64,000 bases of DNA from Octopus sinensis. Its lineage: Eukaryota. Numbering within the stretch: the stretch's first letter is position 1; every line of letters begins with the position of its first letter. A program made the position numbers and the translations under genes. Location of the stretch: contig NC_043025.1 of the NCBI RefSeq assembly GCF_006345805.1, positions 6,262,001 through 6,326,000 on the forward strand, written 5' to 3'. The notes under the pieces are model-generated. The model had not been told where the DNA came from. It saw only the letters and a program-made list of their open reading frames with translations, and made no database searches. Below are positions 11,203 through 56,665 of this stretch, piece by piece.

Positions 11203-11259
<57 letters not shown>

Positions 11260-11262
11260 AGG

Positions 11263-16170: not shown

Positions 16171-16827
16171 TTACTTCTTCTTCTTGGACGCCTGGATTTC
16201 CTCCAATTGTCCGTGTAACTCGCGCAGCTGTCTGTCCGGGATGTAACGGTTCGCGTCGTCGTCGGCGGTGTGGTGCCGTACCCTCAGGGTGACCCCTTCG
16301 GGCAGGTGACACGTGAAGAGCGAGATGAGCGGCGGCAGGGCGGTGTTGGTCAAATCCTGGAGCAGGACGTTCCGTTCGTACACCTGCAGCTCGTAGGTGT
16401 TGTCGGTCACGGTCGATTGGGGCCGATACGTGGAGACGTGGAGTGATTTGGCCGGCATGGCGAAGGCCTCGCAGTTGTGGCCCAGGTTATCACACATCTT
16501 ATGCACGTAGCATGCAAACTTCTCCAGCACCACGAAATCGTAACCCTTCATCTCGATGCACAGTGCTTCGTAAGGCTCTATTTCTGGTGGGAGGCCGACA
16601 TCGGTCGGCTCCCAGCGGATGGGGTCCCGACGCGGGGTCAAAGTCGCGGCATTCCGTGTCCCGCTGATCGAAGATGGCGATTCATTTCCTGTGGAAGCAG
16701 ACGTAAGAGAAGATGAACAAGACACAGAAGAAGCAATAACGGACTTCTGCTGCCTCAATAAACCTCCAAGGATATCCCTGTGTGATCCGAATCTCCGGAG
16801 GAGATTCGATGCGACCGGAAGAAGCAT
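16171..16827 (-). CDS. MRPL48: Mitochondrial ribosomal protein L48 (mL48), single coding exon, 218 aa
   Basis: YDFVVLEKFACYVHKMCDNL..EAFAMPAK, YERNVLL, LPEGVTLRVRHHT and RYIPDRQLREL align with recalled human MRPL48 (YAQYVHNLCNSL..ESYAMPTK, LPEGVRLSVKEHT, RFKARPELEEL). R/S/L-rich N-terminus fits a mitochondrial presequence. Confidence 0.9.
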   Translation of the reverse strand: MLLPVASNLLRRFGSHRDILGGLLRQQKSVIASSVSCSSSLTSASTGNESPSSISGTRNAATLTPRRDPIRWEPTDVGLPPEIEPYEALCIEMKGYDFVVLEKFACYVHKMCDNLGHNCEAFAMPAKSLHVSTYRPQSTVTDNTYELQVYERNVLLQDLTNTALPPLISLFTCHLPEGVTLRVRHHTADDDANRYIPDRQLRELHGQLEEIQASKKKK

Positions 16828-24142: not shown

Positions 24143-24348
24143 TTAGTTAACAAGTTGGTCCTCATAGTCTGTATATTTGTTACTTTTGCCAAACACTCTG
24201 TCTGCAGGATATTTCTTTGCGTTCTTCTGGAATTTACGCAGGGCAGCACTTGGAAGGTCAACCCTACACCGGTGCGCCAACCAAATCAGATATATTAAGA
24301 CATCACTCATTTCCTCACCTACATGTTCCTTTTCACATTCAGAAAATT
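24143..24348 (-). CDS. DCTPP1: DUF4817-like HTH / dCTP pyrophosphatase 1, copy A, exon 4 of 4
   Basis: Acceptor ttttttccag|AA at 24348; (E)FSECEKEHVGEEMSDVLIYLIWLAHRCRVDLPSAALRKFQKNAKKYP...QLVN*; EEMSD and K..N...YP motifs of DCTPP1. Join 32255-31975, 27879-27769, 26370-26336, 24348-24143 = 633 nt, 210 aa. Confidence 0.92.
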
Positions 24349-26335: not shown

Positions 26336-26370
26336 CTGGAAGTCCTTGTTTCACTTCACCCTTCCACTGA
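26336..26370 (-). CDS. DCTPP1: DCTPP1 copy A, exon 3 (35 nt)
   Basis: ctgttttcag|TCAGTGGAAGGGTGAAGTGAAACAAGGACTTCCAG|gtagg gives (F)QWKGEVKQGLP(E), containing the conserved FQW; identical to the copy B exon. Confidence 0.92.
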
Positions 26371-27768: not shown

Positions 27769-27879
27769 AATATTTCAGCGAGTTCTCCGACTTCTCCAAC
27801 CAGTGCCAACAAGATATTTCGTGGGGTTTGATACTGGTCCCGGTTCCGTGCCAGGCAGAAGTCCTCCTGTTTCTGGCGA
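27769..27879 (-). CDS. DCTPP1: DCTPP1 copy A, exon 2 (111 nt)
   Basis: ttttccag|T CGC...ATA TT|gtaag; RQKQEDFCLARNRDQYQTPRNILLALVGEVGELAEI(F) matches DCTPP1 PRNLLLALVGEVGELAELF. Confidence 0.92.
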
Positions 27880-31974: not shown

Positions 31975-32255
31975 ATATCTTCCAAAGTGGTTTGTAGACT
32001 AAATTTAAACTCAGGTTCGTCCTCAAGTCGCGTGATCTCACCGTTCTGCCGTGGTTGTTTTGGCGGTGATGTTCCCACATCGCCGTTTGAGTGGATATTT
32101 TCCGTAGCCTGGAAATTCTTTTCCCAAGTTAAAAGCATCTGATCTGTTGGAGGTTCTTCTGCGTAGTTCTCCGTCCATTTAACTCGCACAGCCTCCGTTG
32201 ATTTCAGCTCTGCCAGCCACAAAACCGCCTGCAACTTCTGGTTGAATGCTGCCAT
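31975..32255 (-). CDS. DCTPP1: DCTPP1 copy A, exon 1 (281 nt): DUF4817-like HTH, linker and start of the pyrophosphatase domain
   Basis: ATG 32255; ends FKFSLQTTLED-AT|gtaagt. The phase-2 join with exon 2 gives TLEDIR, as in human FSFSPEPTLEDIR. Confidence 0.9.
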
Positions 32256-32941
32256 GATTTAGCGCTTCTAAATTTGGATGTGCACAGCCTTAAGAAAGAC
32301 AACTCACACTGATTTATTATTTATAATGTGTTGGGCGTATCTCAGGTAACATGATAACACTGGGTAAGGTCGTTAGTAGGAGGAGTTAGGAAGGGAAATG
32401 GGAGGAAAATCAAATAAAGTTTTAAAAAACAGTATAAAGAAGATTTCATTTTCGTTTTCGTGATAGATTTGGGATATAACTATTTGAAATATTGCTGTCA
32501 GAGACTAGGGATATCTAGAACAATACAGTAAAAGATTTAGAAGTCGTTGGGTACATAAGTAAGTAGACAGAGGTAAGGGCCGGTCGATAAAAAGATGGAT
32601 TGACAGATACATCTGTTTGATACTCTCTTTTACTCTTTTACTCGTTTCAGTCATTTGACTGCGGCCATGCTGGAGCACCGCCTTTAGTCGAGCAAATCGA
32701 CCCCGGGACTTATTCTTTTGTAAGCCCAGTACTTATTCTATCGGTTACTTTTGCCGAACCGCTAAGTGACGGGGACGTAAACACCAGCATCGGTTGTCAA
32801 GCAATGCTAGGGGAAGAAATGCTATTTAAAATACAATGCAAGTGTTGAAGATTTATAGTGTAGGTATTTCATAATTTGTCTTTCTAATTGACACGCATGT
32901 TACGCAAGAATTGCCCTATTTTTATTCTTAGTTATTTTGTA

Positions 32942-33048
32942 CAGGGTGATTCAAAAGCCACCATACATAGGAAAAAATATTTTTTTTATAAGTAGTTTAA
33001 TAAAAAAAAAAAAATGTTCTTATGTATGGCGACTTTTGAATCGCCCTG
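32942..33048. mobile_element. 107-bp Tc1/mariner-type MITE, TA-flanked, TIR CAGGG[T/C]GATTCAAAAG
   Basis: ta|cagggtgattcaaaagccaccatacata...tatgtatggcgacttttgaatcgccctg|ta. Confidence 0.8.
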
Positions 33049-33699
33049 TAAAAATAGGGCTCAGACTTTCGGGAAAGACTTCCTTTTGTACCCCGTACCC
33101 ATTTATTTGTTTCAGTCATTTGACTGTGGCCATGCTGGAGCACCGCCTTTTTAGTCGAGCAAATCGACTCCAGGACTTATTCTTTGTAAGCCTACTATTT
33201 ATTCTATCGGTCTCTTTTGCCGAACCGCTAAGTTACGGAGACGTAAACACACCAGCATCGGTGTTCAAGCAATGGTGGGGGGACAAACACAGACACACAC
33301 ACACACATATATATATATACATATATACGACGGGCTTCTTTCAGTTTCCGTGGACCCAATCCACTCACAAGGCTTTGGTCGACCCGAGGCTATAGCAGAA
33401 GACACTCGCCCAAGGTGCCACGCAGTGGGACTGAACCCGGGACCATGTGGTTGGAAAGCAAGTTTCTTACCACACAGCCACTCCTACACCATCGTAATTT
33501 AATAACTGAACCCCAATCCTAGTTAACGCAGCAGATGGTGCTCAATTGATCTATGAGGATGGTAGAAGTGGGGGAAATTTGGTGCTTATGTGGGACCTAC
33601 AGTGCTGTACTCACAGAGTGGCATACACCATTCTATGCCTGACTGGCTGTACTGTAGTAGTACATAGTATGTAGGTTTTCAAGGTGAGCTCTGACTGGC

Positions 33700-33745
33700 C
33701 GTATGCAAATGAGTTCATTACTGAGGTCCGGAACTCACGTGGGAA
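33700..33745. promoter_or_regulatory. Candidate cis-elements in the 2.5-kb divergent intergenic region (octamer ATGCAAAT 33703-33710, E-box CACGTG 33736-33741)
   Basis: Motif matches within the only long non-repeat block between the two DCTPP1 ATGs; motif presence only. Confidence 0.2.
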
Positions 33746-34234
33746 AAGAATTTCGGGGCCGGTACCTTCAGCCACCCCTGAATATTCCAATAAAAGTTGA
33801 ATTACATTTTTTTATTCTTTTACTTGTTTCAGTCATTATATTGAATACATGGTACAGAATATATTTTAATAATTTTTAGTGATTCATAACTATCAAACAG
33901 GCTCAGCTTTAGAAATATATTATCACTGTTAGATAAAGATTATATCTTTCCTTTTCATTGTTTAGTTTATATTTTAACTTCCAGCCCCAAGTATACCAGT
34001 TAATAAGTCCGGTACTGTATAATATAATCTTTCTTAGAAATGGATGCGTGCGTTCCATCTTGTCCTGTACTCTATTTTTTCGTTGTTTAAGAAAAATGTC
34101 CTGTTCCTTGGTTTTGTGTTTATGTTTTCGTTTCTCATTGTCTGACGTTTTTTTGGTGTCCTGTACCCATATATGCATGTAGAGGTAGGTACGTACATAT
34201 ATGTATATATATATGCATATGTTTTATTTATTAA

Positions 34235-34634
34235 CTAGCAGTATCGCCCGGCGTTGCTCGGGTTTGTAAGGGAAATAACTATATAAGCATATTTAGAGAG
34301 TTATAGCCAAAAAATAGCAAAAAAATGCATTAAAAATGGAAAAAAATGATGGTAAATTTTTTTTAAAATCGTTGACTCATCGTAGATATTTTAGAGAGTT
34401 ACTTCCCTTATATAATAGCGAAAAAAATGCATTAAAATGGGGGAAAATGATGGTAAATTTTTTTTAAATTGTAGACTCATCGTAGACGCGCGCTAATACC
34501 CAGAAGGGCTCGATATGAATCACGACTATAAGATACCCGGTTTTGGTTAAACTGCACCGCAAAATGTGGGAGTAGTTAGGAATCTAAATCGTAGGAGACA
34601 GACACTCACACAACCTCACTTTTATATATAAAGA
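34235..34634 (-). mobile_element. Non-autonomous Helitron
   Basis: A|CTAG at the left with hairpin cccggcgttgctcggg, ...AAGA|T at the right (TC start on the minus strand); same terminal design as 5073-5501. Confidence 0.8.
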
Positions 34635-34800
34635 TTTACTGTATAATATAAGGTCATTTGGCTGCTATTTCTAGCCGCTCAAACAGTCACCCAGCATACG
34701 TCCTGTTTAATTTCTGCAAGGGAGATAATTGGAAACGTTTTGAATAATAAGCCAGTCGGAGTTATCTCTCTTAACCTCCATTACCGCGAATCGTTGAATG

Positions 34801-35084
34801 ATGGCAGCATTCGACCAGAAGTTGCAGGCGGTTTTGTGGCTGGCAGAGCTGAAATCAACGGAGGCTGTGAGAGTTAAATGGACGGAGAAGTACGCAGAAG
34901 AACCGCCAACAGATCAGATGCTTTTAACGTGGAAAAAGAATTTCCAGGCTACGGAAAATATCCACTCGAACGGAGATGTGGGAACATCCCCACCAAAAAG
35001 ACCGCGACAAGACTTTGAGAAGACGACGAACCTTGAGGACGAAGCTGGGTTTAAATTCAGTCTGGAAACCACTTTGGAAGATAT
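34801..35084 (+). CDS. DCTPP1: DUF4817-like HTH / dCTP pyrophosphatase 1, copy B, exon 1 of 4 (284 nt)
   Basis: MAAFDQKLQAVLWLAELKS...FKFSLETTLED-AT|gtgagt. Join 34801-35084, 54563-54673, 55341-55375, 56454-56665 = 642 nt, 213 aa (an in-frame ATG also at 34798). Confidence 0.9.
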
Positions 35085-36693
35085 GTGAGTATTGAAGCTT
35101 TTATACTGTTCTGTTCGGTTCAGTAACTGGGTGGTGGCCATGCTGGGGCACTGCCTTCAAAGAGACTAACACCGGTTTAGCAAGCTGTGTTGAACAAGCA
35201 CAAAACACGTTCCCTCATATATATAACGGATATAAATATATATACATGTGTGTATATATATGTATATATATATATGTGTGCATATATACTCTTTACTCTT
35301 TTACTTGTTTCAGTCATTTGGCTGCGGCCATGCTGGAGCACCGCCTTTAGTCGAGCAAATCGACCCCGGGACTTATTCTTTTGTAAGCCCAGTACTTATT
35401 CTAACAGTCTCTTTTTGCCAAACCGCTAAGTGACGGGGACGTAAACACACCAGCATCGATTGTCAAGCAATGCTACGGGGACAAACACAGACACACACAC
35501 TCATACATATATACGACGGGCTTCTTTCAGTTTCCGTCTACCAAATCCGCTCTCAAGTCATTGGTCGGCCCGGGGCTATAGTAGAAAACACTTGCCCAAG
35601 GTGTCACACGGAACCATGTGGTTGGTAAACAAGCTACTTACCACACAGCCACGCCTGCGCCTATGTATATATATATATATATTATATTATATTTATATTA
35701 TTGGTTTATGTCTATCACTGTTTGAGTTGCCTAATAGTGGTTTTATCTCTAATTTATATATATATATATATGTGTGTGTGTGTGGTGGAGGTAAAGAATA
35801 CGCACACCACCCGTTTTCGGCGTAACCCTAACCCCAAGGCCATCTCATTCCTTTGAAAGGCTCTCTGCAACTAATCCCTTCAATCAAAATTCATAAGCTA
35901 TACACCTTTTATTCGTAGCTATATTTTACTTTATTCTATCTAAAGTTCAATATTTCATGTTATTTTAGGATAAGAATGTCTTTAAAAGTACAAGTTATGA
36001 ATTTATTTAGGTTAATATAGGGCTGGAACTATCGGGCGATCTTTCGTCTCTAGTAGACCTTTCCGTCGATTTCCGTAAAAAACTTCTTTTTTTTTTACAT
36101 ATGGGCTTGCGGGAACTTTTGAAGTATTATACATACATATATACACATACACCGAGTAAAAAATTTCAGTTATCTCTTTCTTTCACACATTACTCTGTCT
36201 CTTCACACACACTAACAGAAGCACTTCACTTACACAACATACTGTCTGTCTCCCACACCCCATCAAACACACACACACACACATGTACATCAATGCTTCA
36301 CATGCACGGTAACTTCAAAAGAACTTCCCTCGTCATACAATCGCTTTCTCTTAGTCTCTTGGTAAGGAAGGCCAACATTTAATAGGGTTGAATAATTTAT
36401 TTGATGGACTCACAAATTTGCTAATCCGCTCAATGCCAGCGAACAACCAAACATAAACATTTTAATTAGAATTACAATCTGTAAATGGAATTAACTGATT
36501 ATACGTATGACAGCCGTTAAGACGATTGCAACGAATACAAAAAAAGTGCGGGAGACCGGGTCGGGCCCTCCTCCGTTTTCTGCAGAAAGAATGCATTTCC
36601 GATAGCTTACCGGGTCAACTTAGACGATTGCACCCGAAAAAACCTTGGAGACAAAAATTATTTAGTACCGAAATCGAGTCTTGTGTGAAACTA

Positions 36694-36727
36694 ACTATCT
36701 ATCTATCTGTGTGTGTCTATCTGTCTG

Positions 36728-36800
<73 letters not shown>

Positions 36801-36819
36801 ATCTATCTATCTGTGTCTG

Positions 36820-36881
<62 letters not shown>

Positions 36882-36888
36882 GTGTCTG

Positions 36889-36942
<54 letters not shown>

Positions 36943-36949
36943 GTGTCTG

Positions 36950-36999
<50 letters not shown>

Positions 37000-37006
37000 G
37001 TGTCTG

Positions 37007-37056
<50 letters not shown>

Positions 37057-37075
37057 CTATCTATCTATCTATCTA

Positions 37076-37107
<32 letters not shown>

Positions 37108-37110
37108 TCT

Positions 37111-37145
<35 letters not shown>

Positions 37146-37152
37146 GTGTCTG

Positions 37153-37214
<62 letters not shown>

Positions 37215-37221
37215 GTGTCTG

Positions 37222-37282
<61 letters not shown>

Positions 37283-37289
37283 GTGTCTG

Positions 37290-37321
<32 letters not shown>

Positions 37322-37348
37322 ATCTATCTATCTATCTATCTGTGTCTG

Positions 37349-37414
<66 letters not shown>

Positions 37415-37421
37415 GTGTCTG

Positions 37422-37460
<39 letters not shown>

Positions 37461-37467
37461 GTGTCTG

Positions 37468-37520
<53 letters not shown>

Positions 37521-37537
37521 CTATCTATCTGTGTCTG

Positions 37538-37580
<43 letters not shown>

Positions 37581-37598
37581 GTGTCTGTCTATCTATCT

Positions 37599-37649
<51 letters not shown>

Positions 37650-37656
37650 GTGTCTG

Positions 37657-37715
<59 letters not shown>

Positions 37716-37890
37716 GTGTCTGTCTATCTATTTATCTGTGTGTGTGTGTGTCTATCTGTGTGTGTGTGTCTATCTGTCTGTCTATCTATCTGTGTGTGTG
37801 TCTATCTGTCTATCTATCTGTGTGTGTGTCTCTCTCTGTCTGTCTATCTATCTGTCTGTCTGTCTATTTGTGTGTGAGTCTATCTTTCTG
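36694..37890. repeat. ~1.2-kb (TATC)n / GATA microsatellite with recurrent tgtgtctgtc and attatc variants
   Basis: Direct reading; source of the 400+ aa YLSI pseudo-ORFs. Confidence 0.95.
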
Positions 37891-38874
37891 TCTATATACA
37901 CTCATACATAAACATATAACCTATATATACAAACAAACACACCCATACACAGACTTTTATATAGTTTCCGTCTATCTGCTCTAGCCAAAGCATTGGTCAG
38001 GGCTTGGGGGGTCTATAGTAGAAAATAACCGGAGAACTTTAAATCTTTGTGCTAAAACTGTTTTGAAACTATTTGTGGGGAAGAAAGAAAAAAAAGAATC
38101 AAAGACGTTCTAGCTGTGACCTTCTCTGTTAAGTTCTTAGTCAGCCCCGTAATTAAAGCACTGAGGTCGTGACCATCGTGTCAATATGTGTTCATCATCA
38201 TCATCATTTAACGTCCGCTTCCCATGCTGGCATGGGTTGGACGATTCAACTGGGGTCTGGGAAGCCAGGAGGCTGCACCAGGCCCAGTCTGATCTGGCAG
38301 TGTTTCTACAGCTGGATGCCCTTCCTAATGCCAACAACTCCATGAGTATAGTGGGTGCTTTTTACGTGCCACCAGCACAGGTGCCAGACGGGGCTGGCAG
38401 ACGGCCACGATCGGATGGTGCTTTTTACGTGCAACCAGCACGGGGACCAGACGAAGCTGGCAACGGCCACGGTCGGATGGTGTTGTATATTTATAACTAC
38501 TTTATGTATCCGTTCTTTTTCATGACATTAAGTAAGGTGTTAATTGAGGGCACTTTAGTTGTTATATGTAAGAAGAGTTAGTTTGCCATATTTTTTCTTT
38601 CAATTTTTGAGTTTTTCTTACATTTCATATTTTCCCGCGTGAATTACATGACAGTAAATCCCAGCACTTGAAATACCGAAACGAAAACGATAGTGGCCAC
38701 TGCTGTTGGAATTTAAATGGATTAATGCAGGGGTCGGAGAACTTTTTTTAACCAATTACCCCAAAATATATTTATTTACGGTGATGTTACCCCCTTCATT
38801 TGAAAGGAAGAAAATCATAGATTCTTTGAATTCGAAAGGTTCATTGACTCTATTTATATGGAGAATACAATCTA

Positions 38875-41359: not shown

Positions 41360-42195
41360 TCTTCCCTAATGCAGGTGCCAAGAAATCTTTTACATTTCTT
41401 CAGTCAATTTCTTACATTTTCAATTCTTTTCAATTTCCTACATTAAGAATAGGGGAACAGGGTACTTGATACCAAGCAAAAACACTCCCACTTCTTTCAG
41501 TTTTCCTAATGCGGGTGCCAAGCAATCTTTTACATTTCTTCAGGCAATTTCTTACATTAAGAATAGGGGAACAGGGTACTTGATACCGAGCGAAAACACT
41601 CCCACTTCTTTCAGTTTTCCTAATGCGGGTGCCAAGCAATCTTTTACATTTCTTCAGGCAATTTCTTACATTAAGAATAGGGAAACAGGGTACTTGATAC
41701 CGAGCGAAAACACTCCCACTTCTTTCAGTTTTCCTAATGCGGGTGCCAAGCAATCTTTTACATTTCTTCAGGCAATTTCTTACATTAAGAATAGGGGAAC
41801 AGGGTACTTGATACCGAGCGAAAACACTCCCACTTCTTTCAGTTTTCCTAATGCGGGTGCCAAGCAATCTTTTACATTTCTTCAGGCAATTTCTTACATT
41901 AAGAATAGGGGAACAGGGTACTTGATACCGAGCGAAAACACTCCCACTTCTTTCAGTTTTCCTAATGCGGGTGCCAAGCAATCTTTTACATTTCTTCAGG
42001 CAATTTCTTACATTAAGAATAGGGGAACAGGGTACTTGATACCGAGCAAAAACACTCCCACTTCTTTCAGTTTTCCTAATGCGGGTGCCAAGCAATCTTT
42101 TACATTTCTTCAGGCAATTTCTTACATTAAGAATAGGGGAACAGGGTACTTGATACCGAGCAAAAACACTCTCACTTCTTTCAGTTTTCCTTACT
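41360..42195. repeat. 114-bp minisatellite, about 7 units
   Basis: agcaatc at 41521 and 41635 gives the period; the 38-aa repeat in the ORF track agrees. Confidence 0.92.
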
Positions 42196-43049
42196 GAAAT
42201 GCATGCCAATGCATGCATTAAAATTTCATGTGTCTGTTTTTGCTTCTTCTTTAATGTGGACCTGCAGACCTACCAACTTACCTTTAACCATTCCTACACT
42301 CACATGCGCATCAACGGCAATTTCTGCCCCACCAGCACCCCTAAACAAACCTAAGCAACTCATCCACTTGCTCTTTCATTAACCCTTTTGTTACCTAACC
42401 CTAACCCTGGCTGAAACAGGCCCTGGCTCTGTAGTACAAATGTCTTGTTTTCATAAGTTTTGAATTAAAATCTTCCACCAAACCTTAGTCACAATTAATG
42501 CTCCTAACACTAGCTGAATGATAACTTAGTTATTTTACTAAATTCTTTGCTATATTTAAAATTAATTGAAAGAAACACAGAGCATCTCAACAGAAATACG
42601 GTAACAAAAGGGTTCAAGTCACCATGATATTTTTAACCCTTTTGATACCAACTTGGTTGAAACCACCCCTGGCTCTGTAGTACAAATGTCTTGTTTTCAT
42701 AAGTTTTGAATTAAAATCTTCAACCAAACCTTAGTCACAATTTATGTTCCTAACACTAGCTGAATGATAACTAAGTTATTTTACTAAATTCTTTATTATC
42801 TTTAAAGTAATTGAAAGAAACACAGAGCATCTCAACAGAAATACAGTAACAAAAGGGTTAACCCTTTCTCTATCCAATCTATACGACAGAGCAGCCATAC
42901 ATTGACAAACAACACCCAAAATTCATGTCCACACAAACGACAACATTCCCAACACAATTCATAAACAATTTCTCCTTTGCTCTTACCATTTCCCTCGCCT
43001 TGCCTTTCACAGTGCGTCCATGCTGCCAACAAAGCACGCGGAGTTCTGT

Positions 43050-43835: not shown

Positions 43836-46800
43836 ATGCCCCGAAGGAAGGCTTCTTCAATTGGACGCAAAACTGCAAGATCCTCAGCAAGGAGGGCCAA
43901 TGAATCGTCAGTGGAAACTGACATTAGACAATCCCAAAATGCTGAACATACAGCCACTTCAAGAGCACTCCAAACAGATCACTAGGGTACACTTCGACGA
44001 ACTGTTGATGTTGCCTCAACTGCTGCTGCATGAGCTGCAGAGAAGAAAAACGAATGCGCTCAGGAATGCAGCCAGCCTGGCTGCTGCGCGAGCTTCCCAC
44101 ACCTTACAACAGAGGTATACCATTTCTGCAGACTTCCATTCAACAAAGAGCTCATAGACGAGGATTTTCAACGCCACGATGGTTATTAAAGGCTTTCCAC
44201 TGCAACCCTAACCTTCGTTATGATTGCCACCCAGATATGAACATTGGAGATATGTCCATCATTTGCTCTTTCTGCAAAGCTAAGAAGTGGTCAAGAGAAA
44301 CTCCTGCGATGTGTTGTGCTAATGGAAAAGTTAACCCCACTCCACTGCAGGATCCACCACAGCTCTTAAAGTCACTCTACGCTGGCACAACTACAGAGTC
44401 GAAACATTTCCTGAATAACATCTGGAAGTACAATTGTGCATTCCATATGACATCTTTCGGCGCTAATGTTGTTCAAGAAAGCGGGTTTATGCCAACTTTC
44501 AAAGTGCAGGGACAGATTTACCATTGGATAGGATCGCTCCAACCTGCTGAAAATCAAGATCCTCAATTTTTTTAACTGTACTTTGTAGGTAATTTACATG
44601 AACAGGCCACCCGACGAAACCCCATTTCCATTGGTACTAACTTTCACTTGATAATGCAACTGCACAACTGCAAGACCTTTTGCACCAGGAAAACAGCTAT
44701 GTATGCAGCTTCAAGTATACCTTGGAAACAGAAGATTCATTAAATTTTAATGTTGTCATTGATGCCCAGAAAAGACCATCCAGGGAACATGCAGGCCGTT
44801 ACAATGCACCCACATGCAATGAAATGTCTGTACCCCTTCACGGTGAACAGCACAATCCCAGAGACATTGTCCTCAGCCGACGTGACACCACCCTCCAACG
44901 AAATAGTGAAACACACCGATTATACGATTCACTCCAATACCCACTTCTGTTTGTTAACGGTGAGGATGGCTACCACATCGATATAGCACTGCAAGATCCC
45001 CCAATTTGTAATGAACATCTCAACAAGCCAATGTCCTGCATGGACTTCTACTCATACTTCCACTTCGCCAATGACACCCTGCCATTCAACAGCTTGCAGT
45101 GCACCTGGAAAACGGTCAAAGAGTGTACTTCACCGATGCTAATGCTTCTCTGTTGTCAGAGGAACCAAGGGATAGCACACTCACTGCATTCTTCAAGCTT
45201 TGTCAAGTGTATCCATTCGCTCAAACTTTGCTGTATCCACAGATTCCATCGTACTACACTTGGAATGGAAAAAAAAATGGGCCCCACGGAAAGCAGGTCA
45301 AAATGTTCATGGATACCCTGGCATTAAGTTTCACACTTGCCTTGGGCGAGTATACACAGTGCATCCCACTCAACAAGAGTGCTTCTACCTCCGTCTACTA
45401 CTGCATGAGGTCAGAGCGCCAACGTCTTTCCAGGCCCTAAAAACCGTTCTTGGACATGTCTGCACAACATACAGAGAAGCCTGCTATCGACAAGGTCTGT
45501 TAGAAGATGGTGCACAATGGGATGCAACTTTGGGAGAGGCTGCTTTATCAGAATCACCTCAAAGTCTCAGGGTCACTATTTGCAGTATTACTACAAACAT
45601 GTGAGCTGTATGATTCTGCCACTCTATGGCTCAAATACAGAGACAACCCGGCTGAAGACTTTCGGTGCCAAGCTCAACTGCTCTATCCTGACATGGAGGG
45701 TATCAGCAATGAAGTCTATAACAAAACTCTCATTGACATTGAAGGCAGAATTACTAAACTGGGTGGAAATGAATTGTCCCCGTATGGCCTGCCGCAAACA
45801 TTCAGGTCAGGGTCAAATAGCCTTCCCACTGCTGTCATTCGTGAAACAACCTACGACACTCAAGCGCTTTCAAAGTTCATTGTTGAAAATGAGCCTAAAT
45901 TACTTCTGGACCAGCTGCAGGCCTACAGAACTATTCTTAACAGTGCATGCCAATGCGAGGGACAAATCTTCTTCCTCGATGCTCCTGGAGGGACAGGAAA
46001 AGCATTTATTACAAAGCTTCTCCTTGCAGAAGTTAGGTAGCATCAGGACGTTGCAGTAGCTGTAGCATCCTCTGGCATTGCAGCTACTTTGTTACCCGGT
46101 GGCAGGACAGCACACTCAACGTTTAAACTTCCTCTCAATTTAGCAGCATCCGAGATGCCTTCATGCAACATCAACAGAAGCTCAGATCAGGGGCAAGTAC
46201 TTAAAATGTGTCATCTAATTGTCTGGGATGAGTGCACCATGGCTCACAAGGGAGCTTTGGAAACATTAGATAGAGCCCTGAAAGACATCCGAGACTGTCA
46301 GGCTCCAATGGGAGGTGTAACGCTTCTGTTGTCAGGTGATTTCAGGTAAACTTTCCCTGTCGTTCCGAAAGGCACTAGAGCTGATGAAGTTCAAGCATGC
46401 CTAAAGTTCTCTACCCTGTGGCATCATATTACGATCCTCAGTCCTACCACTAATATGAGAGCTTAGCTACATGGCAACCAAATGTCCATAAAGGTTGCAC
46501 AGGACATTTTGACACTTGGTGAAGGCAGGATGCCTCTCGATGCTGCAGGACAAATGGAAGTGTAGCCATTTTCCTTTGTTGTTAATTCCGTAGATGAGCT
46601 CAAACAAAAAGTCTTTCCCAACTTCACAGAAAACTACTAAAATCACAATTGGCTGTGCAAAAGAGCAATATTACGAGGGGCGTTCAATAAGTAATGCCCC
46701 TGACCCACTTCCCATAGGAGTAGAGCAACGAAACTTGGCACAGTTATTAGTCTTTTTCTACATAGGAACCACCCAGAGTTACGCATTTCTCCCATCGTTT

Positions 46801-47641
46801 GCTGCGGCTCTGGAGACCGTTTTTGTAGAAGAACCCAGCTTGGTCCTCCAACCTGAACGTGACTTCAGAAATCAAGGCTGCATCATCTGGGAAACGCTTT
46901 CCTTTCAAAAACAACTTCATGATTGGGAAGAGGTAAAAATCAGAGGGTGCAAGGGGAGGAGTTCATAGCTGCACGCCTGTGCTTCTGATCTGGCGACAAG
47001 CGAGTTGTGGACCGGAGCGTTGTCCTGCAGGAGGAGGATGCCTTTGCTGATCTTGCCCTGCCTCTTGATTTTGATAACTTCTCTTAATTTCCTCAAAACG
47101 TCGCTGTTAACAAAATTAATCAACAGCTAATGCATTCTCTTCCCGGCACTATACACACTTACAAGTCTGTTGATACAATTCCCGATATAAATGAAATTGT
47201 GAACTATCCTCTTGAATTTCTCAATTCATTGGAGCCTCCTGAACTACCTCCGCACATATTAGCACTTAAAGTTGGAACTCCTGTAATGCTACTCCGCAAT
47301 CTGGAACCACCAAGACTTTGCAATGGAACACGACTGGTGATAAAGAAAACGATGTCACACGTTATCGAGGCAATAATTTTTTCTGGATGTGGAAAAGGTG
47401 ATGACTTCTTTATTCCAAGAATTCCTCTCGCTCCATCAGACGACTGCAATTCCTCCTTCGTGTCAGCTTTGCCATGTCCATTAACAAATCTCAGTGTCAA
47501 ACCCTCTCAGTAGCTGGTCTTCTCTTGGAAGAGCCCTGCTTCTCGCATGGACAACTGTATGTTGGGTGCTCAAGAATGGAAAGCGAAAGAAGCCTCTTTG
47601 TATATGCTCCACAAGGAACATTGTTTACGATGAGGTGTTAT
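43836..47641 (+). mobile_element. Degenerate Helitron RepHel pseudogene (PIF1-like helicase present, Rep core deleted)
   Basis: MPRRKASSIGRKT, CSFCKAKKWSRETPAMCCANGKV, GQIYHWIGSL, GRYNAPT, YDSLQYPLLF, VHLENGQRVYF, FLDAPGGTGK (Walker A), GRTAHSTFKLP, IVWDEC (Walker B), LLLSGDFR, MLLRNL..LCNGTRL, SINKSQ.QTL, HGQLYVGCSR; many stops and frameshifts. Confidence 0.93.
46674..47100 (-). mobile_element. Mariner 3' fragment nested in the Helitron helicase region
   Basis: TIR ta|cgaggggcgttcaataagtaatgc; minus-strand KGILLLQDNAPVH...PSDFYLFP...KRWEKCVTLGGSYVEKD*. The Helitron frame WLCKRAIL resumes as AVNKINQQL after it. Confidence 0.88.
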
Positions 47642-48900: not shown

Positions 48901-50179
48901 TTGCTTGACAACTAATGTTGGTATCTTTATGTCTTCATAAATTAGCAGCTTCACAAAAGAGACTGGATAGAAGGAGTACTTGGGGGTCAATTCATTTGAC
49001 TAAAGGCAAAGCTCCACTAACGCCTCACTCAAATATTTTAAACAAGTAAAAGTTCCATTTTGTAGACATCAGGGGCGTGCACTCTCAGCTATGCGCTGCA
49101 TGCCTTCTTTGTTTCAAAGAAAATACGTCCAGTTGTTTTAGAAATATTGTCTCCCCTTCGTACATCTGCTTTGATAAATGCTTTTAGAAGATCGCATGAT
49201 ACACACTCCCTCTCTGTCTGTATTAGTTTGTCCTTCCTTCCTCTCTCTCTCTCTCTTAGTGGCTCGATAAATTTATCGCTTGTCATGTGTTGGGAAGACC
49301 GCATGAGACCCCCTCTCTCTCTCTCTTTGTTAGTTTGTCCCTCCTTCCTCTCTCTCTTAGTGACTTATTTAAAAGATATGCTAGGAGGAATGGTCACCCC
49401 CTTCTCTCTCAGTGATTCGAGAAATTCAGATATTTGAATAAATTTAAATACCTGTCAAATGGTGGTTTGGGTTTCAGTTCCTTCCCGGTCTAAAAATGAT
49501 TTTTTTTTTGTTATTAACTGGAATTGATTTAAATATCTTTATTTTTTTACCCCTTAACATTGTTACTGCTTTGTCTGTGAAAAGGTGGTTTGGGTTTCAA
49601 TTCCTTCCCAGTCTAAAAAAGTTTTTTTCGAGAATTCTATCTTTGAATCATTTTGGAATCCATTTTGTTTTTTTGTTTTTCTAGTTAATTATAATTAATT
49701 TTTGTTTATTTTCAGATCATTAAAATGGGATGTCAAGTTAAGAAAAACGAGCATTTTCAACACCTGCTTCTTTTTGCTTTTAATCAAGGTTCTAAGGGTG
49801 CAAAAGCTGCTTGCTACATTTGTGCCGTGTATGGAGTGGGTGCCATAGCTGAAAGAACTGCACCCAACACCAGAGCAGAAGACACCTCCGCTAGAGGAAT
49901 AGGGGCCGAAAGTGGACGTGGTTCCTCCTGATGATGTCTTGAGCTAACTGGATCCTATAAAGGAGCTGTTGTGGTAGCAGACCACGAAGCACGGTTGTAA
50001 TTCCTCCTTTAACTCACCCCCACCACTCCACTGCTCTTGAAATTCCTTTATCTGCAAGGACATCCAAACAGATCCCTAATTTGGGAGAGCAAACAAACAG
50101 AGATACATAAAACCATTTTCTGTGATCGGTTATTGATCTTCAGCTAGGATAGGTTTAAATATCTCATTTTTTCACTCTA

Positions 50180-51567: not shown

Positions 51568-52280
51568 AGTGGTTTGGGTTTCAATGTCTTCCCAGTCTAA
51601 AAGTAATTTTATTTTGGTGGTCTGGGTTTCAATGTCTTCCCAGTCTAAAAGTAATTTTATTTTGGTGGTCTGGTTTCAATGTCTTCCCAGTCTAAAAGTA
51701 ATTTTATTTTGGTGGTCTGGGTTTCAATGTCTTCCCAGTCTAAAAGTAATTTTTTTTTGGTGGTTTGGGTTTCAATGTCTTCCCAGTCTAAAAGTATTTT
51801 ATTTTGGTGGTCTGGTTTCAATGTCTTCCCAGTCTAAAAGTAATTTTATTTTGGTGGTCTGGGTTTCAATGTCTTCCCAGTCTAAAAGTAATTTTTTTTG
51901 GTGGTTTGGGTTTCAATGTCTTCCCAGTCTAAAAGTAATTTTATTTTGGTGGTCTGGGTTTCAATGTCTTCCCAGTCTAAAAGTAATTTTTTTTTGGTGG
52001 TTTGGGTTTCAATGTCTTCCCAGTCTAAAAGTAATTTTATTTTGGTGGTCTGGGTTTCAATGTCTTCCCAGTCTAAAAGTAATTTTATTTTGGTGGTCTG
52101 GGTTTCAATGTCTTCCCAGTCTAAAAGTAATTTTTTTTTGGTGGTTTGGGTTTCAATGTCTTCCCAGTCTAAAAGTAATTTTATTTTGGTGGTCTGGGTT
52201 TCAATGTCTTCCCAGTCTAAAAGTAATTTTATTTTGGTGGTCTGGGTTTCAATGTCTTCCCAGTCTAAAACTAATTTTTT
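51568..52280. repeat. 48-bp tandem array, about 15 units, derived from part of the 120-bp unit
   Basis: ggtggtctgggtttcaatgtcttcccagtctaaaagtaattttatttt; only one unit in the mirrored arm. Confidence 0.92.
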
Positions 52281-54562
52281 TTTTGTTATTTACTGAAATA
52301 GATTTAAATATCTGAATTTTCCCATTAATTTTGTAGCAGTTTCGGTGGCCTAGTAGGTAAGGTGCTAGAAGTAGTGGCATAATAATGGTTGAGGTTTCAA
52401 ACCTCTGCCGGGAAATTCATTTTTTTCCACTAGAGACAAAAAAAGTGAAAAATCTTGATTTCCCGGCAGAGGTTTGAAACCTCAACCATTATTATGCCAC
52501 TACTTCTAGCACCTTACCTACTAGGCCACCGAAACTGCTACAAAATTAAAGGGAAAATTCAGATATTTAAATCTATTTCAGTAAATAACAAAAAAAAATT
52601 ACTTTTAGACTGGGAAGACATTGAAACCCAAACCACTTTTGAACAGACAAAGGCTGCCTCAAGACCCATTTTTCTCACACACACATACATACACACTATG
52701 CTTCGTTGTTTACTCCAGATCAGTTCTACTCCACCAGACCAATTTCAGTTAATAAAAAAAAAAATTTTTAGACTGAGAAGGATTTGAAACCCTAACCACC
52801 ATTTAACAGACAAAGCAGCAACAATGTTAAGGGGTAAAAAAAAAAAAAAAAAAGATATTTAAATTTTTGTGCCTAATGAAAAGATTTGGTAACTATGGCA
52901 AGGCTGTCTTGAGACCCAATTTTCGCACACACACACATACACACACACTATGCTTCATTGTTTACTCCAGATTAGTTCTACTCTACCAGACCAATTATAA
53001 TTAACGACACTCCAGTTGTGACCATCTCTAGCCACTTGTCTATAATCATAATACTTCACTTAATAACAAGAAAATAATTTTTAGACTGGGAAGGAATTGA
53101 AACCCAAACCAACATTTAACAGACAAAGCAACAACAATGTTAAGGGGAAAATAAAGATATTTCAATTTATTTCAGTTAATAACAAAAAAAAAAAATTACT
53201 TTTTGACTGGGAAGGAATTGAAACCCAAACCACCATTTAACAGACAAAGCAACAACAATGTTAAGGGGAAAATAAAGATATTTCAATTTATTTCAGTTAA
53301 TAACAAAAAAAAAAAATTACTTTTTGACTGGGAAGGAATTGAAACCCAAACCACCATTTAACAGACAAAACAGCAACAATGTTTAGGGGTAAAAAAAAAG
53401 ATATTTCAATTTATTTCAGTTAATAACAAAAAAAAAAAATTACTTTTTGACTGGGAAGGAATTGAAACCCAAACCACAGAAATAGAGTGAAAAAATGAGA
53501 TATTTAAACCCATCCTAGCTGAAGATCAATAACCAATCACAGAAAAAGGTTTTACGTATCTCTGTTTGTTTGCTCTCCCAAATTAGGGATCTGTTTGGAT
53601 GTCCTTGCAGATAAAGGAATTTCAAGAGCAGTGGAGTGGTGGGGGTGAGTTAAAGGAGGAATTACAACCGTGCTTCGTGGTCTGCTACCACAACAGCTCC
53701 TTTATAGGATCCAGTTAGCTCAAGACATCATCAGGAGGAACCACGTCCACTTTCGGCCCCTATTCCTCTAGCGGAGGTGTCTTCTGCTCTGGTGTTGGGT
53801 GCAGTTCTTTCAGCTATGGCACCCACTCCATACACGGCACAAATGTAGCAAGCAGCTTTTGCACCCTTAGAACCTTGATTAAAAGCAAAAAGAAGCAGGT
53901 GTTGAAAATGCTCGTTTTTCTTAACTTGACATCCCATTTTAATGATCTGAAAATAAACAAAAATTAATTATAATTAACTAGAAAAACAAAAAAACAAAAT
54001 GGATTCCAAAATGATTCAAAGATAGAATTCTCGAAAAAAACTGTATTCCAAAATTTAAAAACGCAATAAATTCCAAAATTTAAAGAGCCTTAGTTGCCAA
54101 CCCAATATATGTATATAATATAATATAATAAAATCTCAGAGGTGTTGACTTCTGCCGCAACAGTTTTGAGAGGCTTTTTACAATGTTGAATTTTCGCTAT
54201 CTTTCATTGTGCGTGTATTCATGTATGTGGAGGTGCAATGGTTAGGGCAGCGGACTCGCGGTTTCGATTCCCAGACTGGGCGTTGTGAGTGTTTATTGAG
54301 CGAAAACACCTAAAAAAGCTCCACAAGGCTCCGGCAGGGGATGGTGGTGATCCCTGGTGTACTCTTTCACCACAACTCTCTCTCTCTCTTACTTCCTGTT
54401 TCTGTTGTACCTGTATTTCAAAGGGCCGGCCATGTCACTCTCTGTGTCACGCTGAATCTCCTCGAGAACTACGTTAAGGGTACACGTATATATATAAGCT
54501 GTTAGTATATATATAAGCTGCTTATCATAAATCACTTTTCCAACTCTCTAACTTCTTTCCAG

Positions 54563-54673
54563 TCGCCAGAAACAGGAAGACTTCTGCACGGAACGAAACT
54601 GGGCCCAGTATCACACACCACGAAATATCTTGTTGGCACTGGTTGGAGAAGTCGGAGAACTCGCTGAAATATT
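54563..54673 (+). CDS. DCTPP1: DCTPP1 copy B, exon 2 (111 nt)
   Basis: ttctttccag|T CGC...ATA TT|gtaag; RQKQEDFCTERNWAQYHTPRNILLALVGEVGELAEI(F), with the canonical ERxW..YH.PRN. Not shown in the ORF track. Confidence 0.93.
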
Positions 54674-55340: not shown

Positions 55341-55375
55341 TCAGTGGAAGGGTGAAGTGAAACAAGGACTTCCAG
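55341..55375 (+). CDS. DCTPP1: DCTPP1 copy B, exon 3 (35 nt)
   Basis: ctgttttcag|TCAGTGG...CTTCCAG|gtagg. Confidence 0.93.
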
Positions 55376-56453: not shown

Positions 56454-56665
56454 AATTTTCTGAACGTGAAAAGGAACATGTAGGTGAGGAAATGAGTGAT
56501 GTTTTAATATATTTGATTCGGTTAGCCGACCGATGTAGGGTTGACCTTCCAAGCGCTGCTCTGCGTAAATTCCAGAAGAACGCAAAGAAATATCCTGCAG
56601 ACAGAGTCTTTGGCAAAAGTAACAAATATACAGACTATACAGACCAACTTGTTAAAGAAATTTGA
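56454..56665 (+). CDS. DCTPP1: DCTPP1 copy B, exon 4 (212 nt)
   Basis: atttttatttcag|AA TTT TCT...; FSEREKEHVGEEMSDVLIYLIRLADRCRVDLPSAALRKFQKNAKKYPADRVFGKSNKYTDYTDQLVKEI*, TGA at 56663-56665. Confidence 0.93.

What the first reader, a model, noticed from the sequence alone, without database searches (positions are those of the whole stretch)
31975..35084. Transposase-type DUF4817 HTH fused in frame to dCTP pyrophosphatase 1
Seen: in both copies exon 1 encodes QKLQAVLWLAELKSTEAVRVKWTE[K/N]YAEEPPTDQMLLTW[K/E]KNFQATENI, a linker, then FKFSLxTTLEDI, which splices in phase into the DCTPP1 core. Established: human DCTPP1 has only a ~22-aa low-complexity leader there. The leader pattern here (Q...VLW..E.KS...V...W...Y...PP....L..W.K.F..T.NI) fits my recollection of DUF4817 (PF16087), the N-terminal HTH of Tc1/mariner-type transposase-like proteins. 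Hand count between copies over codons 1-56: 4 synonymous and 3 non-synonymous changes, consistent with constraint. Inference: a domesticated transposase DNA-binding domain that could tether a nucleotide-sanitising enzyme to DNA or TE ends and locally control 5-methyl-dCTP pools.
Basis: partly seen in the sequence, partly recalled or inferred. Interest (0 to 1): 0.87.

Follow-up and report, generated by a model that had tools for sequence, protein, structure and literature searches.

The report
Transposase HTH fused to cephalopod DCTPP1
In octopus, argonaut and cuttlefish the housekeeping enzyme that clears unwanted dCTP-type nucleotides carries, at its front end, a small three-helix domain captured long ago from a mariner-type jumping gene; the capture is real, old and undescribed, but the domain no longer looks like a DNA binder.

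Summary
The window is Octopus sinensis and holds two head-to-head, intact, four-exon DCTPP1-like genes. Exon 1 of each encodes the quoted peptide and splices in phase into a MazG-like core.

The DUF4817 assignment holds, but only with profile methods. Pfam alone finds nothing in the window's own peptides, and orthologues score below threshold (E about 0.03). A profile of five cephalopod N-termini retrieves bona fide DUF4817 transposase relics (E down to 3e-14). hhalign against 27 of them gives 99.0% probability (E 8e-18). The source family is mariner-like: DUF4817, a second HTH, then DDE_3, with homology to Mos1.

The fusion also occurs in O. bimaculoides, Argonauta hians and Sepia esculenta, where RNA-seq contigs carry it as one mRNA. 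I saw it in no non-cephalopod DCTPP1 and no paper describing it.

The HTH is constrained (31-49% identity) while the linker is not (7-16%). The proposed DNA or TE-end tethering is unsupported. All five cephalopod HTHs have net charge -3 to 0, against +4.5 for transposon copies, and the lost basic positions lie on helices 2 and 3. Helix 1 is kept. In Mos1 the homologous N-terminal 55 residues also mediate dimerisation.

Verdict: a new member of the host-transposase fusion class, of moderate interest.

The parts
34798..34968 (+). Plus copy, exon 1, residues 1-57: DUF4817-type three-helix HTH (helices 5-18, 21-31, 39-54)
   Evidence: ORF and gene model. Profile homology to DUF4817. AF2 pLDDT 90-97.
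34969..35049 (+). Plus copy, exon 1, residues 58-84: disordered linker that includes PPKRPRQ
   Evidence: AF2 pLDDT about 50-65. It is 7-16% identical between genera and 28-69 aa long. BLASTP aligns its RPR with the transposase SGRPR motif.
35050..35084 (+). Plus copy, end of exon 1: start of the DCTPP1 core (FKFSLETTLED + AT of the Ile codon), followed by donor GTGAGT
   Evidence: It aligns to mouse DCTPP1 FRFSPEPTLEDI.
54563..54673 (+). Plus copy, exon 2 (IRQKQEDFCTERNWAQYHTPRNILLALVGEVGELAEIF): cytosine pocket and first metal-binding motif
55341..55375 (+). Plus copy, exon 3 (QWKGEVKQGLP)
56454..56665 (+). Plus copy, exon 4 with stop codon (EFSEREKEHVGEEMSDVLIYL...KEI*)
   Evidence: Pfam MazG-like 3.8e-11.
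32088..32255 (-). Minus copy, exon 1, residues 1-56: DUF4817-type HTH
   Evidence: (P0002, E 7e-31 to the cephalopod profile).
32010..32087 (-). Minus copy, exon 1: linker (PPKQPRQ...)
   Evidence: (linker omega 0.34, dS 0.59).
31975..32009 (-). Minus copy, end of exon 1: start of the DCTPP1 core (FKFSLQTTLED+AT), donor GTAAGT
27769..27879 (-). Minus copy, exon 2. It carries the W->R and H->Q changes at the positions of human Trp47 and His51.
   Evidence: Residue roles come from PMC13291643.
26336..26370 (-). Minus copy, exon 3
24143..24348 (-). Minus copy, exon 4 with stop codon. It carries R->W at a position that is 88% conserved.
32256..34797 (.). 2.5-kb divergent intergenic region between the two start codons. 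Only about 63-74 bp next to each ATG (32256-32329 and 34735-34797) is still alike between the copies. The rest is SINE-like repeats, microsatellites and one MITE.

Best explanation
SHOWN. Exon 1 of both genes encodes the first helix-turn-helix (DUF4817, the counterpart of Mos1 HTH1) of a mariner-like Tc1/mariner transposase. It has become the N-terminus of the cephalopod dCTP pyrophosphatase DCTPP1. Only this first HTH was captured. There is no second HTH and no DDE domain. The layout is a folded three-helix bundle (about residues 5-54), a fast-evolving disordered linker (28-69 aa), and a MazG-like core that is canonical in the plus copy. The fusion is shared by Octopus, Argonauta and Sepia, so it predates the split between octopods and decapodiforms. 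It is the only DCTPP1 form seen in those species. In O. sinensis the gene has been duplicated head-to-head. The plus copy is the positional orthologue and is canonical. The minus copy has changed its cytosine pocket.

INFERRED mechanism, about 45% likely. The enzyme part still works as a dCTP / 5-modified-dCTP pyrophosphatase. The HTH no longer reads DNA. It serves instead as a protein-protein module on a flexible tether, either for self-association of the HTHs or for docking a partner. The reasoning is that the basic residues on helices 2 and 3 were lost while helix 1 was kept, and that in Mos1 the homologous N-terminal 55 residues form the hydrophobic dimer interface.
For: Identity of the HTH. 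A profile of five cephalopod HTHs finds proteins pre-annotated PF16087 at E 3e-14 to 2e-9 among 5.8 billion sequences. An exhaustive HMMER search of 1.84 billion representatives gives 222 hits, and apart from three cephalopod sequences the listed hits I examined are short transposon-type relics. Six of the ten retrieved proteins I scanned pass Pfam's DUF4817 cut-off and also carry HTH_32 or HTH_Tnp_Tc3_2. P0313 is an intact 347-aa transposase with DUF4817 above cut-off and a DDE_3 match just below it. It is homologous to Mos1 over residues 23-288 (E 4e-7). hhalign of the cephalopod profile against the transposon profile gives 99.0% probability, E 8.4e-18, over 57 columns. AF2 gives three helices with pLDDT above 90.

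Only the first HTH is present: tblastn of the transposase against the window hits only the two exon 1 copies.

One mRNA. Sepia esculenta RNA-seq contigs of about 1 kb encode HTH, linker and core without interruption. There are 31 contigs from several runs, and an in-frame stop lies 6 codons upstream of the ATG. The species was identified from SRR19578109 in PMC10141105. Argonauta has the same exon-1 layout and donor phase.

Constraint. Between genera the HTH is 31-49% identical with no gaps, the linker 7-16%, the core 66-74%. Omega is 0.18 between the paralogues and 0.14 against O. bimaculoides.

The plus copy matches all 57 highly conserved DCTPP1 positions.

Argument against DNA reading. Net charge is -3..0 against +4.5 +/- 2.1, with only 5 of 138 transposon copies at or below 0. 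Positions 26 and 29 are 81% and 77% K/R in transposons and 0 of 5 in cephalopods. Positions 22, 30, 34 and 39 have turned acidic. Helix 1 matches the transposon consensus at 60% of cells, helices 2 and 3 at 25% and 23%. Deleting Mos1 residues 1-55 makes the transposase monomeric (PMC3561948).

Distribution. Only cephalopod proteins cover the full profile, and other molluscs match the core only.
Against: The window's own exon-1 peptides give no Pfam DUF4817 hit at E<=10, so family membership rests on profile methods. Foldseek against the PDB is not significant (best E 1.3), although the top five hits are Mos1 and SETMAR N-terminal HTHs. I found no transcript evidence for O. sinensis itself, only the genome record. 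The protein-protein role is inference only. Conserved helix-1 hydrophobics may simply be the core of the bundle. K8, K19 and K/R27 are retained, and four copies per tetramer could give avidity, so weak DNA binding is not excluded. DCTPP1 is already a tetramer, so the need for a further self-association module is unclear. Counts for dN/dS within Octopus are small, and dS is saturated between genera.
Confidence: 0.55

Rival explanations
1. The captured HTH still binds DNA, either generic chromatin or the terminal repeats of its source transposon family. It tethers the tetrameric dCTPase to DNA so that modified dCTP pools are cleaned locally.
For: The domain descends from a DNA-binding motif. Mos1 HTH1 reads the inner 8 bp of the inverted repeat (PMC3561948). 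Transposase DNA-binding domains captured by host genes usually keep binding their transposons (Cosby et al., bioRxiv 10.1101/2020.05.07.082677). K8, K19 and K/R27 are retained. Octopus keeps a KRPR next to the HTH that aligns with the transposase GRPR motif. Four HTHs per tetramer could give avidity.
Against: Net charge is -3..0 in all five cephalopods, against +4.5 for transposon copies. The strongly basic positions 26 and 29 are lost in 5 of 5. Several helix-3 basic positions are lost or turned acidic. The second HTH and the GRPR linker, which complete the bipartite DNA-binding domain in mariner transposases, are absent. The KRPR is not conserved in Argonauta or Sepia. No copy of the source transposon lies in the window.
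Confidence: 0.25
2. Passenger leader. The transposon fragment supplied a new start codon and 5' end. The HTH is kept folded only because an unfolded or frameshifted leader would harm the enzyme behind it, and it has no activity of its own.
For: Surface residues of helices 2 and 3 evolve freely (23-25% match to the transposon consensus). Argonauta's HTH is strongly diverged, at 31-41% identity to the others. No function is demonstrated.
Against: The adjacent linker shows what unconstrained sequence looks like in the same exon: 7-16% identity and lengths of 28-69 aa. The HTH stays gap-free, with 13 invariant positions across the five aligned HTH sequences. Omega is 0.1-0.2 within Octopus, as low as in the catalytic core. 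The HTH is retained in every cephalopod DCTPP1 seen and in both O. sinensis paralogues.
Confidence: 0.17
3. Annotation or assembly artefact. The HTH reading frame lies upstream by chance, or belongs to a transposon copy, and is not part of the DCTPP1 protein.
For: No O. sinensis transcript could be retrieved here.
Against: Sepia RNA-seq contigs contain the contiguous fusion reading frame. The same exon layout occurs in three genera. The first Met of the reading frame follows an in-frame stop. No transposase body or flanking copy is present.
Confidence: 0.03

Closest known systems
Host-transposase fusion genes (for example SETMAR and KRABINER; Cosby et al., bioRxiv 10.1101/2020.05.07.082677)
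   Same: A transposase DNA-binding module of a Tc1/mariner element is fused in frame to a host domain. The transposase catalytic part is lost or unused. The fusion is kept by selection in a clade.
   Different: The partner is a metabolic enzyme (a MazG-like dCTP pyrophosphatase), not a KRAB, SCAN or SET regulatory domain. Only the first of the two HTHs was kept. The HTH sits in the same exon as the host N-terminus, rather than being joined by alternative splicing. The clade is the cephalopods. The domain has lost its net positive charge.
Pfam PF16087 DUF4817, the N-terminal HTH of mariner-like transposases (for example P0313; Cloeon dipterum XP_065343849, P0290)
   Same: It has the same three-helix pattern, with VLWLAELKS in helix 1 and the PP...W..F motif. 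hhalign gives 99.0% probability, and identity to the nearest transposon copies reaches 49%.
   Different: It falls below Pfam's cut-off. It is not followed by the SGRP linker, the second HTH or DDE_3. The near-invariant Arg and the ETGS motif are lost in most cephalopods. Net charge is about 5-7 units lower.
Mos1 mariner transposase HTH1 (residues 1-55; PDB 3HOS, 5HOO)
   Same: It is the homologous position in a homologous transposase. It is the top, though non-significant, structural match, at rmsd 2.4-2.7 A over 43-49 columns. Mos1 HTH1 is both a DNA reader and the dimer interface (PMC3561948), which is the model for the proposed role.
   Different: Identity is about 22%. Mos1 HTH1 belongs to Pfam HTH_48, not DUF4817. 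Neither dimerisation nor DNA binding has been tested for the cephalopod domain.
Mammalian DCTPP1 / RS21-C6 (PDB 2A3Q, 6SQW, 7MU5)
   Same: The core is clearly orthologous (E 9e-39 over residues 79-207). The plus copy keeps all 57 conserved positions.
   Different: The mammalian N-terminus is a short low-complexity leader (the PDB match begins at chain residue 14). The cephalopod protein adds a folded HTH and a linker. The minus paralogue replaces the Trp47 and His51 equivalents.

Membership tests
Pfam PF16087 (DUF4817 HTH) | Scores above Pfam's gathering threshold (22.6 bits) with the family HMM | tested here: not met
   O. sinensis exon-1 peptides and full proteins give no DUF4817 hit at E<=10. 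The O. bimaculoides and Sepia N-termini score 14.6 and 14.2 bits, E 0.026 and 0.034.
Pfam PF16087 (DUF4817 HTH) | Homology to family members shown by profile methods | tested here: met
   The cephalopod profile retrieves PF16087-annotated proteins at E 3e-14..2e-9. Six of the ten retrieved proteins scanned exceed the Pfam cut-off, at 25.7-42.1 bits. hhalign gives 99.0%, E 8.4e-18, 57 columns.
Pfam PF16087 (DUF4817 HTH) | Three-helix HTH fold of about 55 residues | tested here: met
   AF2 gives helices 3-18, 21-32 and 39-55, with pLDDT above 90 over residues 11-50. The same fold appears in the full-length model. This is a prediction only.
Tc1/mariner transposase (autonomous element) | Bipartite DNA-binding domain (two HTHs) plus a DDE/D catalytic domain, flanked by terminal inverted repeats | tested here: not met
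   tblastn of an intact DUF4817 transposase (P0313) against the window matches only residues 1-78 and 1-61, at the two exon 1 copies. What follows the HTH is a linker and DCTPP1. It is therefore a captured fragment, not a transposon.
Host-transposase fusion / domesticated transposase domain | The transposon-derived and host-derived domains lie in one reading frame of one transcript | tested here: met
   Sepia esculenta RNA-seq contigs carry the whole 232-aa fusion reading frame. Gene models for O. sinensis, O. bimaculoides and Argonauta agree. O. sinensis transcripts were not available.
Host-transposase fusion / domesticated transposase domain | Orthologous retention across species under purifying selection | tested here: met
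   It is present in three genera spanning octopods and a cuttlefish. The HTH is 31-49% identical and the linker 7-16%. Omega is 0.10-0.18 for three of the four within-Octopus estimates and 0.56 for minus against O. bimaculoides, all on small counts.
Host-transposase fusion / domesticated transposase domain | The captured domain keeps binding DNA or the cognate transposon ends | not testable with these tools
   Indirect evidence is unfavourable: net charge of -3..0 and loss of basic positions 26 and 29 and of helix-3 basic positions.
DCTPP1 (all-alpha MazG-like dCTP pyrophosphatase) | MazG-like domain above the Pfam cut-off, and orthology to solved DCTPP1 structures | tested here: met
   PF12643 scores 43.5 and 41.8 bits against a cut-off of 27. 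Mouse and human DCTPP1 match at E 9e-39 to 4e-36.
DCTPP1 (all-alpha MazG-like dCTP pyrophosphatase) | Metal-binding acidic motifs (E..E in GEVGELAE; E..D in EE.SDVL) | tested here: met
   E125, E128, E157 and D160 (plus-copy numbering) are present in both copies, in Argonauta and in Sepia, at positions 100% conserved in 33 other DCTPP1s.
DCTPP1 (all-alpha MazG-like dCTP pyrophosphatase) | Cytosine pocket: the Trp47/Trp73 sandwich and His51 (human numbering; PMC13291643) | tested here: inconclusive
   The plus copy keeps W109, H113 and W135. The minus copy has R and Q at the first two. So the feature is met for one paralogue and not for the other. Human His38 is Gln in both octopus copies and in Sepia. 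Enzyme activity was not tested.

The most novel reading that the evidence does not exclude
The HTH, four copies per DCTPP1 tetramer, still recognises DNA, possibly relics of its own mariner-like transposon family. It would place a dCTP / 5-modified-dCTP-destroying enzyme on chromatin. Cephalopods would then police which cytosine nucleotides reach the polymerase at particular loci. That would be a locus-tethered nucleotide-pool sanitiser, which I know from no other organism.
Probability: 0.15. Interest if true: 0.8.

Novelty: new member of a known kind. Interest (0 to 1): 0.5.

Why it matters
DCTPP1 is a conserved housekeeping enzyme that keeps dCTP and 5-modified dCTPs out of DNA. It was the only DCTPP1 form among the best 120 hits listed for the cephalopods covered by the databases searched. 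In each of them it carries a folded domain taken from a mariner-type transposase, and it has kept that domain since before octopuses and cuttlefish diverged.

Known host-transposase fusions are mostly transcription factors. This one joins a transposase HTH to a metabolic enzyme, and the HTH seems to have been repurposed away from DNA binding. That makes it a clean natural case for asking what else a captured HTH can become. It also flags a lineage-specific twist in nucleotide-pool control in a clade known for transposon-rich genomes.

The O. sinensis duplicate with an altered cytosine pocket adds a small, testable case of paralogue divergence.

Tried and rejected
1. Direct Pfam scan of the window's exon-1 peptides gave no DUF4817 hit, only a chance SWI-SNF_Ssr4_N match at E 0.03. 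I did not take this as refutation, because orthologues gave sub-threshold DUF4817 hits and the profile methods were decisive.

2. Foldseek of the HTH model against the PDB gave no significant hit. I use it only as weak, consistent evidence.

3. I looked for transcript contigs of the two O. sinensis proteins and found only the genome record.

4. Literature searches found nothing on this fusion. They covered DUF4817, DCTPP1 with octopus, and dCTP pyrophosphatase with cephalopod. The main text of a large TE-domain fusion screen (PMC12062965) mentions neither MazG nor molluscs.

5. I considered that the CAGGGTG inverted repeat marks the source transposon. It is a single 111-bp TA-flanked MITE with no other copy in the window, and no transposase body lies nearby. 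I rejected it as evidence for a target site.

6. I considered that the KRPR in the linker is a conserved nuclear-localisation signal or AT-hook relic. It is present only in Octopus, so I do not rely on it.

7. dN/dS between genera is unusable because dS is saturated. I used the contrast in identity between HTH, linker and core instead.

8. Nautilus or other basal cephalopods could not be checked, because no such record appeared in the searches.
Full report
**What is in the window**

The window is Octopus sinensis. Two NCBI proteins named 'dCTP pyrophosphatase 1-like [Octopus sinensis]' match my gene models at 100% (P0001) and as the second copy (P0002). Both map to chromosome record CM016887.1.

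There are two head-to-head genes of four exons each.
- The minus copy has exons 32255..31975, 27879..27769, 26370..26336 and 24348..24143, and encodes 210 aa.
- The plus copy has exons 34798..35084, 54563..54673, 55341..55375 and 56454..56665, and encodes 214 aa.

All introns have GT..AG borders. Exon 1 ends with two bases of an Ile codon, which the first base of exon 2 completes. A TGA stop lies directly upstream of the plus-copy ATG.

**The C-terminal part is DCTPP1**

Pfam MazG-like scores 43.5 and 41.8 bits against a cut-off of 27. Mouse and human DCTPP1 structures match residues 79-207 at E 9e-39 to 4e-36, and nothing in the PDB matches residues 1-78 by sequence.

I compared both copies with 33 non-cephalopod DCTPP1s. 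The plus copy keeps all 57 positions that are at least 85% conserved, including the acidic metal-binding residues.

**Is the leader DUF4817?**

The O. bimaculoides and cuttlefish N-termini give DUF4817 at E about 0.03, scoring 14 bits against a cut-off of 22.6.

Profile methods settle the question.
- A profile of five cephalopod N-termini (A1) was searched against 5.8 billion proteins. It finds 29 short proteins. Ten of the top eleven are pre-annotated PF16087, at E 3e-14 to 2e-9. They share VLWLAELKS and the PP...W..F pattern, and continue into a PRSGRP motif.
- An exhaustive HMMER search of 1.84 billion cluster representatives gives 222 hits at E<=1e-3. Only three of the 150 listed are cephalopod-type, and the others I examined are short transposon-type relics.
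- Six of the ten retrieved proteins I scanned pass Pfam's DUF4817 threshold, at 25.7-42.1 bits. They also carry HTH_32, HTH_psq or HTH_Tnp_Tc3_2.
- P0313 is an intact 347-aa transposase with DUF4817 above cut-off, followed by HTH_32 and DDE_3 matches below their cut-offs. It aligns to the Mos1 mariner transposase over residues 23-288 (E 4e-7).
- hhalign of the cephalopod profile against 27 such transposon proteins gives 99.0% probability, E 8.4e-18, over 57 columns.
- UniRef already names the truncated O. bimaculoides model 'DUF4817 domain-containing protein'.
- AlphaFold2 predicts three helices with pLDDT above 90.
- Foldseek against the PDB is not significant, but its top five hits are the N-terminal HTHs of Mos1 and SETMAR.

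The leader is therefore the first HTH of a mariner-like transposase. Only that piece is present. tblastn of the intact transposase against the window hits nothing but the two exon 1 copies.

**Distribution and age**

The same HTH-linker-DCTPP1 protein occurs in O. bimaculoides, Argonauta hians and a protein known only from Logan contigs (P0013). Argonauta has the same exon-1 layout and donor phase.

P0013 lies on 31 contigs of about 1 kb from several sequencing runs, with the whole 232-aa reading frame uninterrupted. One of those runs, SRR19578109, is a Sepia esculenta transcriptome (PMC10141105). These contigs are therefore cDNA, and they show that the HTH and the enzyme sit on one mRNA. An in-frame stop lies six codons upstream of the ATG.

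In two full-length searches, only cephalopod proteins cover the whole query. Other molluscs, annelids, arthropods and further groups match the core only. The species with the fusion show no second, HTH-less DCTPP1 among the hits listed. The capture therefore predates the split between octopods and decapodiforms. No Nautilus record was available. I found no paper describing the fusion.

**Constraint**

Between genera the HTH aligns without gaps at 31-49% identity. The linker in the same exon is 7-16% identical and 28-69 aa long. The core is 66-74% identical.

Within Octopus, omega for the HTH is 0.18 between the paralogues over codons 1-57. On a 53-codon core it is 0.10 between the paralogues, 0.14 for plus against O. 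bimaculoides and 0.56 for minus against O. bimaculoides. The counts are small. Between genera dS is saturated.

The full-length AlphaFold2 model shows two confident domains joined by a low-confidence linker covering residues 55-85.

**What the HTH probably does**

Nothing here tests function, so this part is inference.

The sequence does not favour it.
- All five cephalopod HTHs have a net charge of -3 to 0. The 138 transposon-type domains average +4.5 (sd 2.1), and only five of them are at or below 0.
- Column by column, positions 26 and 29 are K/R in 81% and 77% of transposon copies and in none of the cephalopods.
- Several helix-3 positions that are often basic are lost or turned acidic.
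- Helix 1 matches the transposon consensus at 60% of cells, against 25% for helix 2 and 23% for helix 3.
- The second HTH, which completes the bipartite DNA-binding domain in mariner transposases, is missing.

In Mos1 the homologous N-terminal 55 residues have two roles. They read the inner 8 bp of the inverted repeat, and they form the hydrophobic interface that makes the transposase a dimer. Deleting them gives a monomer (PMC3561948).

My best reading is that the cephalopod domain kept its fold and its helix-1 surface and lost the DNA-reading surface. It would then act as a protein-protein module, for self-association or partner docking, on a flexible tether attached to an otherwise ordinary dCTPase. 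I put this at about 45%. I put residual DNA binding at about 25%, a folded leader with no activity of its own at about 17%, and artefact at about 3%.

**The duplication**

Between the two copies, similarity around exon 1 extends only about 63-74 bp upstream and about 35 bp into the intron.

The plus copy shares more upstream sequence with the single O. bimaculoides gene, to about -160 bp plus a further block. O. bimaculoides has no second exon 1 within 6 kb upstream. The plus copy is therefore the positional orthologue.

The minus copy differs at three highly conserved positions, 100%, 100% and 88% conserved: W->R, H->Q and R->W. The first two correspond to human Trp47 and His51. These are one half of the tryptophan sandwich around the cytosine base and a histidine proposed as a cytosine selectivity filter (PMC13291643). 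The minus paralogue has probably changed or lost its cytosine preference, while keeping its HTH.

**Comparison with what is known**

The case belongs to the known class of host-transposase fusions. Cosby et al. count at least 94 in tetrapods, mostly DNA-binding domains joined to KRAB-type regulators through alternative splicing.

This one differs in four ways: the partner is a metabolic enzyme, only one HTH was captured and it sits inside the host's first coding exon, the clade is different, and the electropositive surface has apparently been lost. I rate it a new member of a known kind, with moderate interest.

Noticed in passing
window 27769-27879 and 24143-24348 (minus copy, exons 2 and 4): The minus paralogue replaces the equivalents of human Trp47 (W->R) and His51 (H->Q), both 100% conserved in 33 other DCTPP1s. 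It also has R->W at a position that is 88% conserved. The plus copy is canonical. Trp47 and His51 line the cytosine pocket (PMC13291643). Substrate preference has probably changed or been lost.
   Followed up: partly
window 32940-33050: A single 111-bp TA-flanked MITE with arms of about 50 nt (TACAGGGTGATTCAAAAG...) lies between the two start codons. There is no other copy in the window. It looks mariner-like from its terminal sequence, by my own recollection. No link to the HTH is shown.
   Followed up: partly
window 44030-47513 (+), inside intron 1 of the plus copy: A run of broken reading frames matches PIF1-like helicase (PF05970, E 1e-23) and the Pif1 2B domain. This is a decayed Helitron-like element, and it helps explain why intron 1 of the plus copy is 19.5 kb against 4.1 kb in the minus copy.
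   Followed up: partly
window 49725-49931 (+) and 53731-53937 (-): Two identical 68-aa reading frames in inverted orientation match the Mos1-type HTH_48 domain (E 6e-9). They are fragments of an ordinary mariner, a different HTH family from DUF4817. A separate fragment resembling a mariner C-terminus lies at 8251-8523 (-).
   Followed up: partly
window 16171-16827 (-): An intact 218-aa single-exon reading frame carries a Ribosomal_S10 domain (E 1.5e-14). It is probably the mitochondrial ribosomal protein S10 gene or a retrocopy of it.
   Followed up: partly
L009 (O. bimaculoides) about 11000-11320: The first half of the last DCTPP1 exon is missing, replaced by a run of N and a dispersed repeat. 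The locus holds 5055 N in total. This explains the aberrant O. bimaculoides models (P0006, P0007, P0010). I could not tell whether it is an assembly gap or a real insertion.
   Followed up: partly
window 36526-37984, 41430-42218, 51569-52315: Three long tandem-repeat blocks show up as repetitive reading frames on several frames. The first is a CT-rich short-period array with strong strand skew (GC skew -0.38). The second has units of about 35 codons. All three lie within intron 1 of the plus copy.
   Followed up: no
P0003 (Ostrea edulis), P0004 (Aplysia californica), P0005, P0008, P0315 (Owenia): Several other lophotrochozoans encode proteins with two DCTPP1 cores in tandem in one polypeptide. 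This is a different way of elaborating the same enzyme.
   Followed up: no
window 25-726 (+): A 233-aa open reading frame at the window's left edge looks like a coding exon of a helical-repeat protein, but it has no Pfam match.
   Followed up: no
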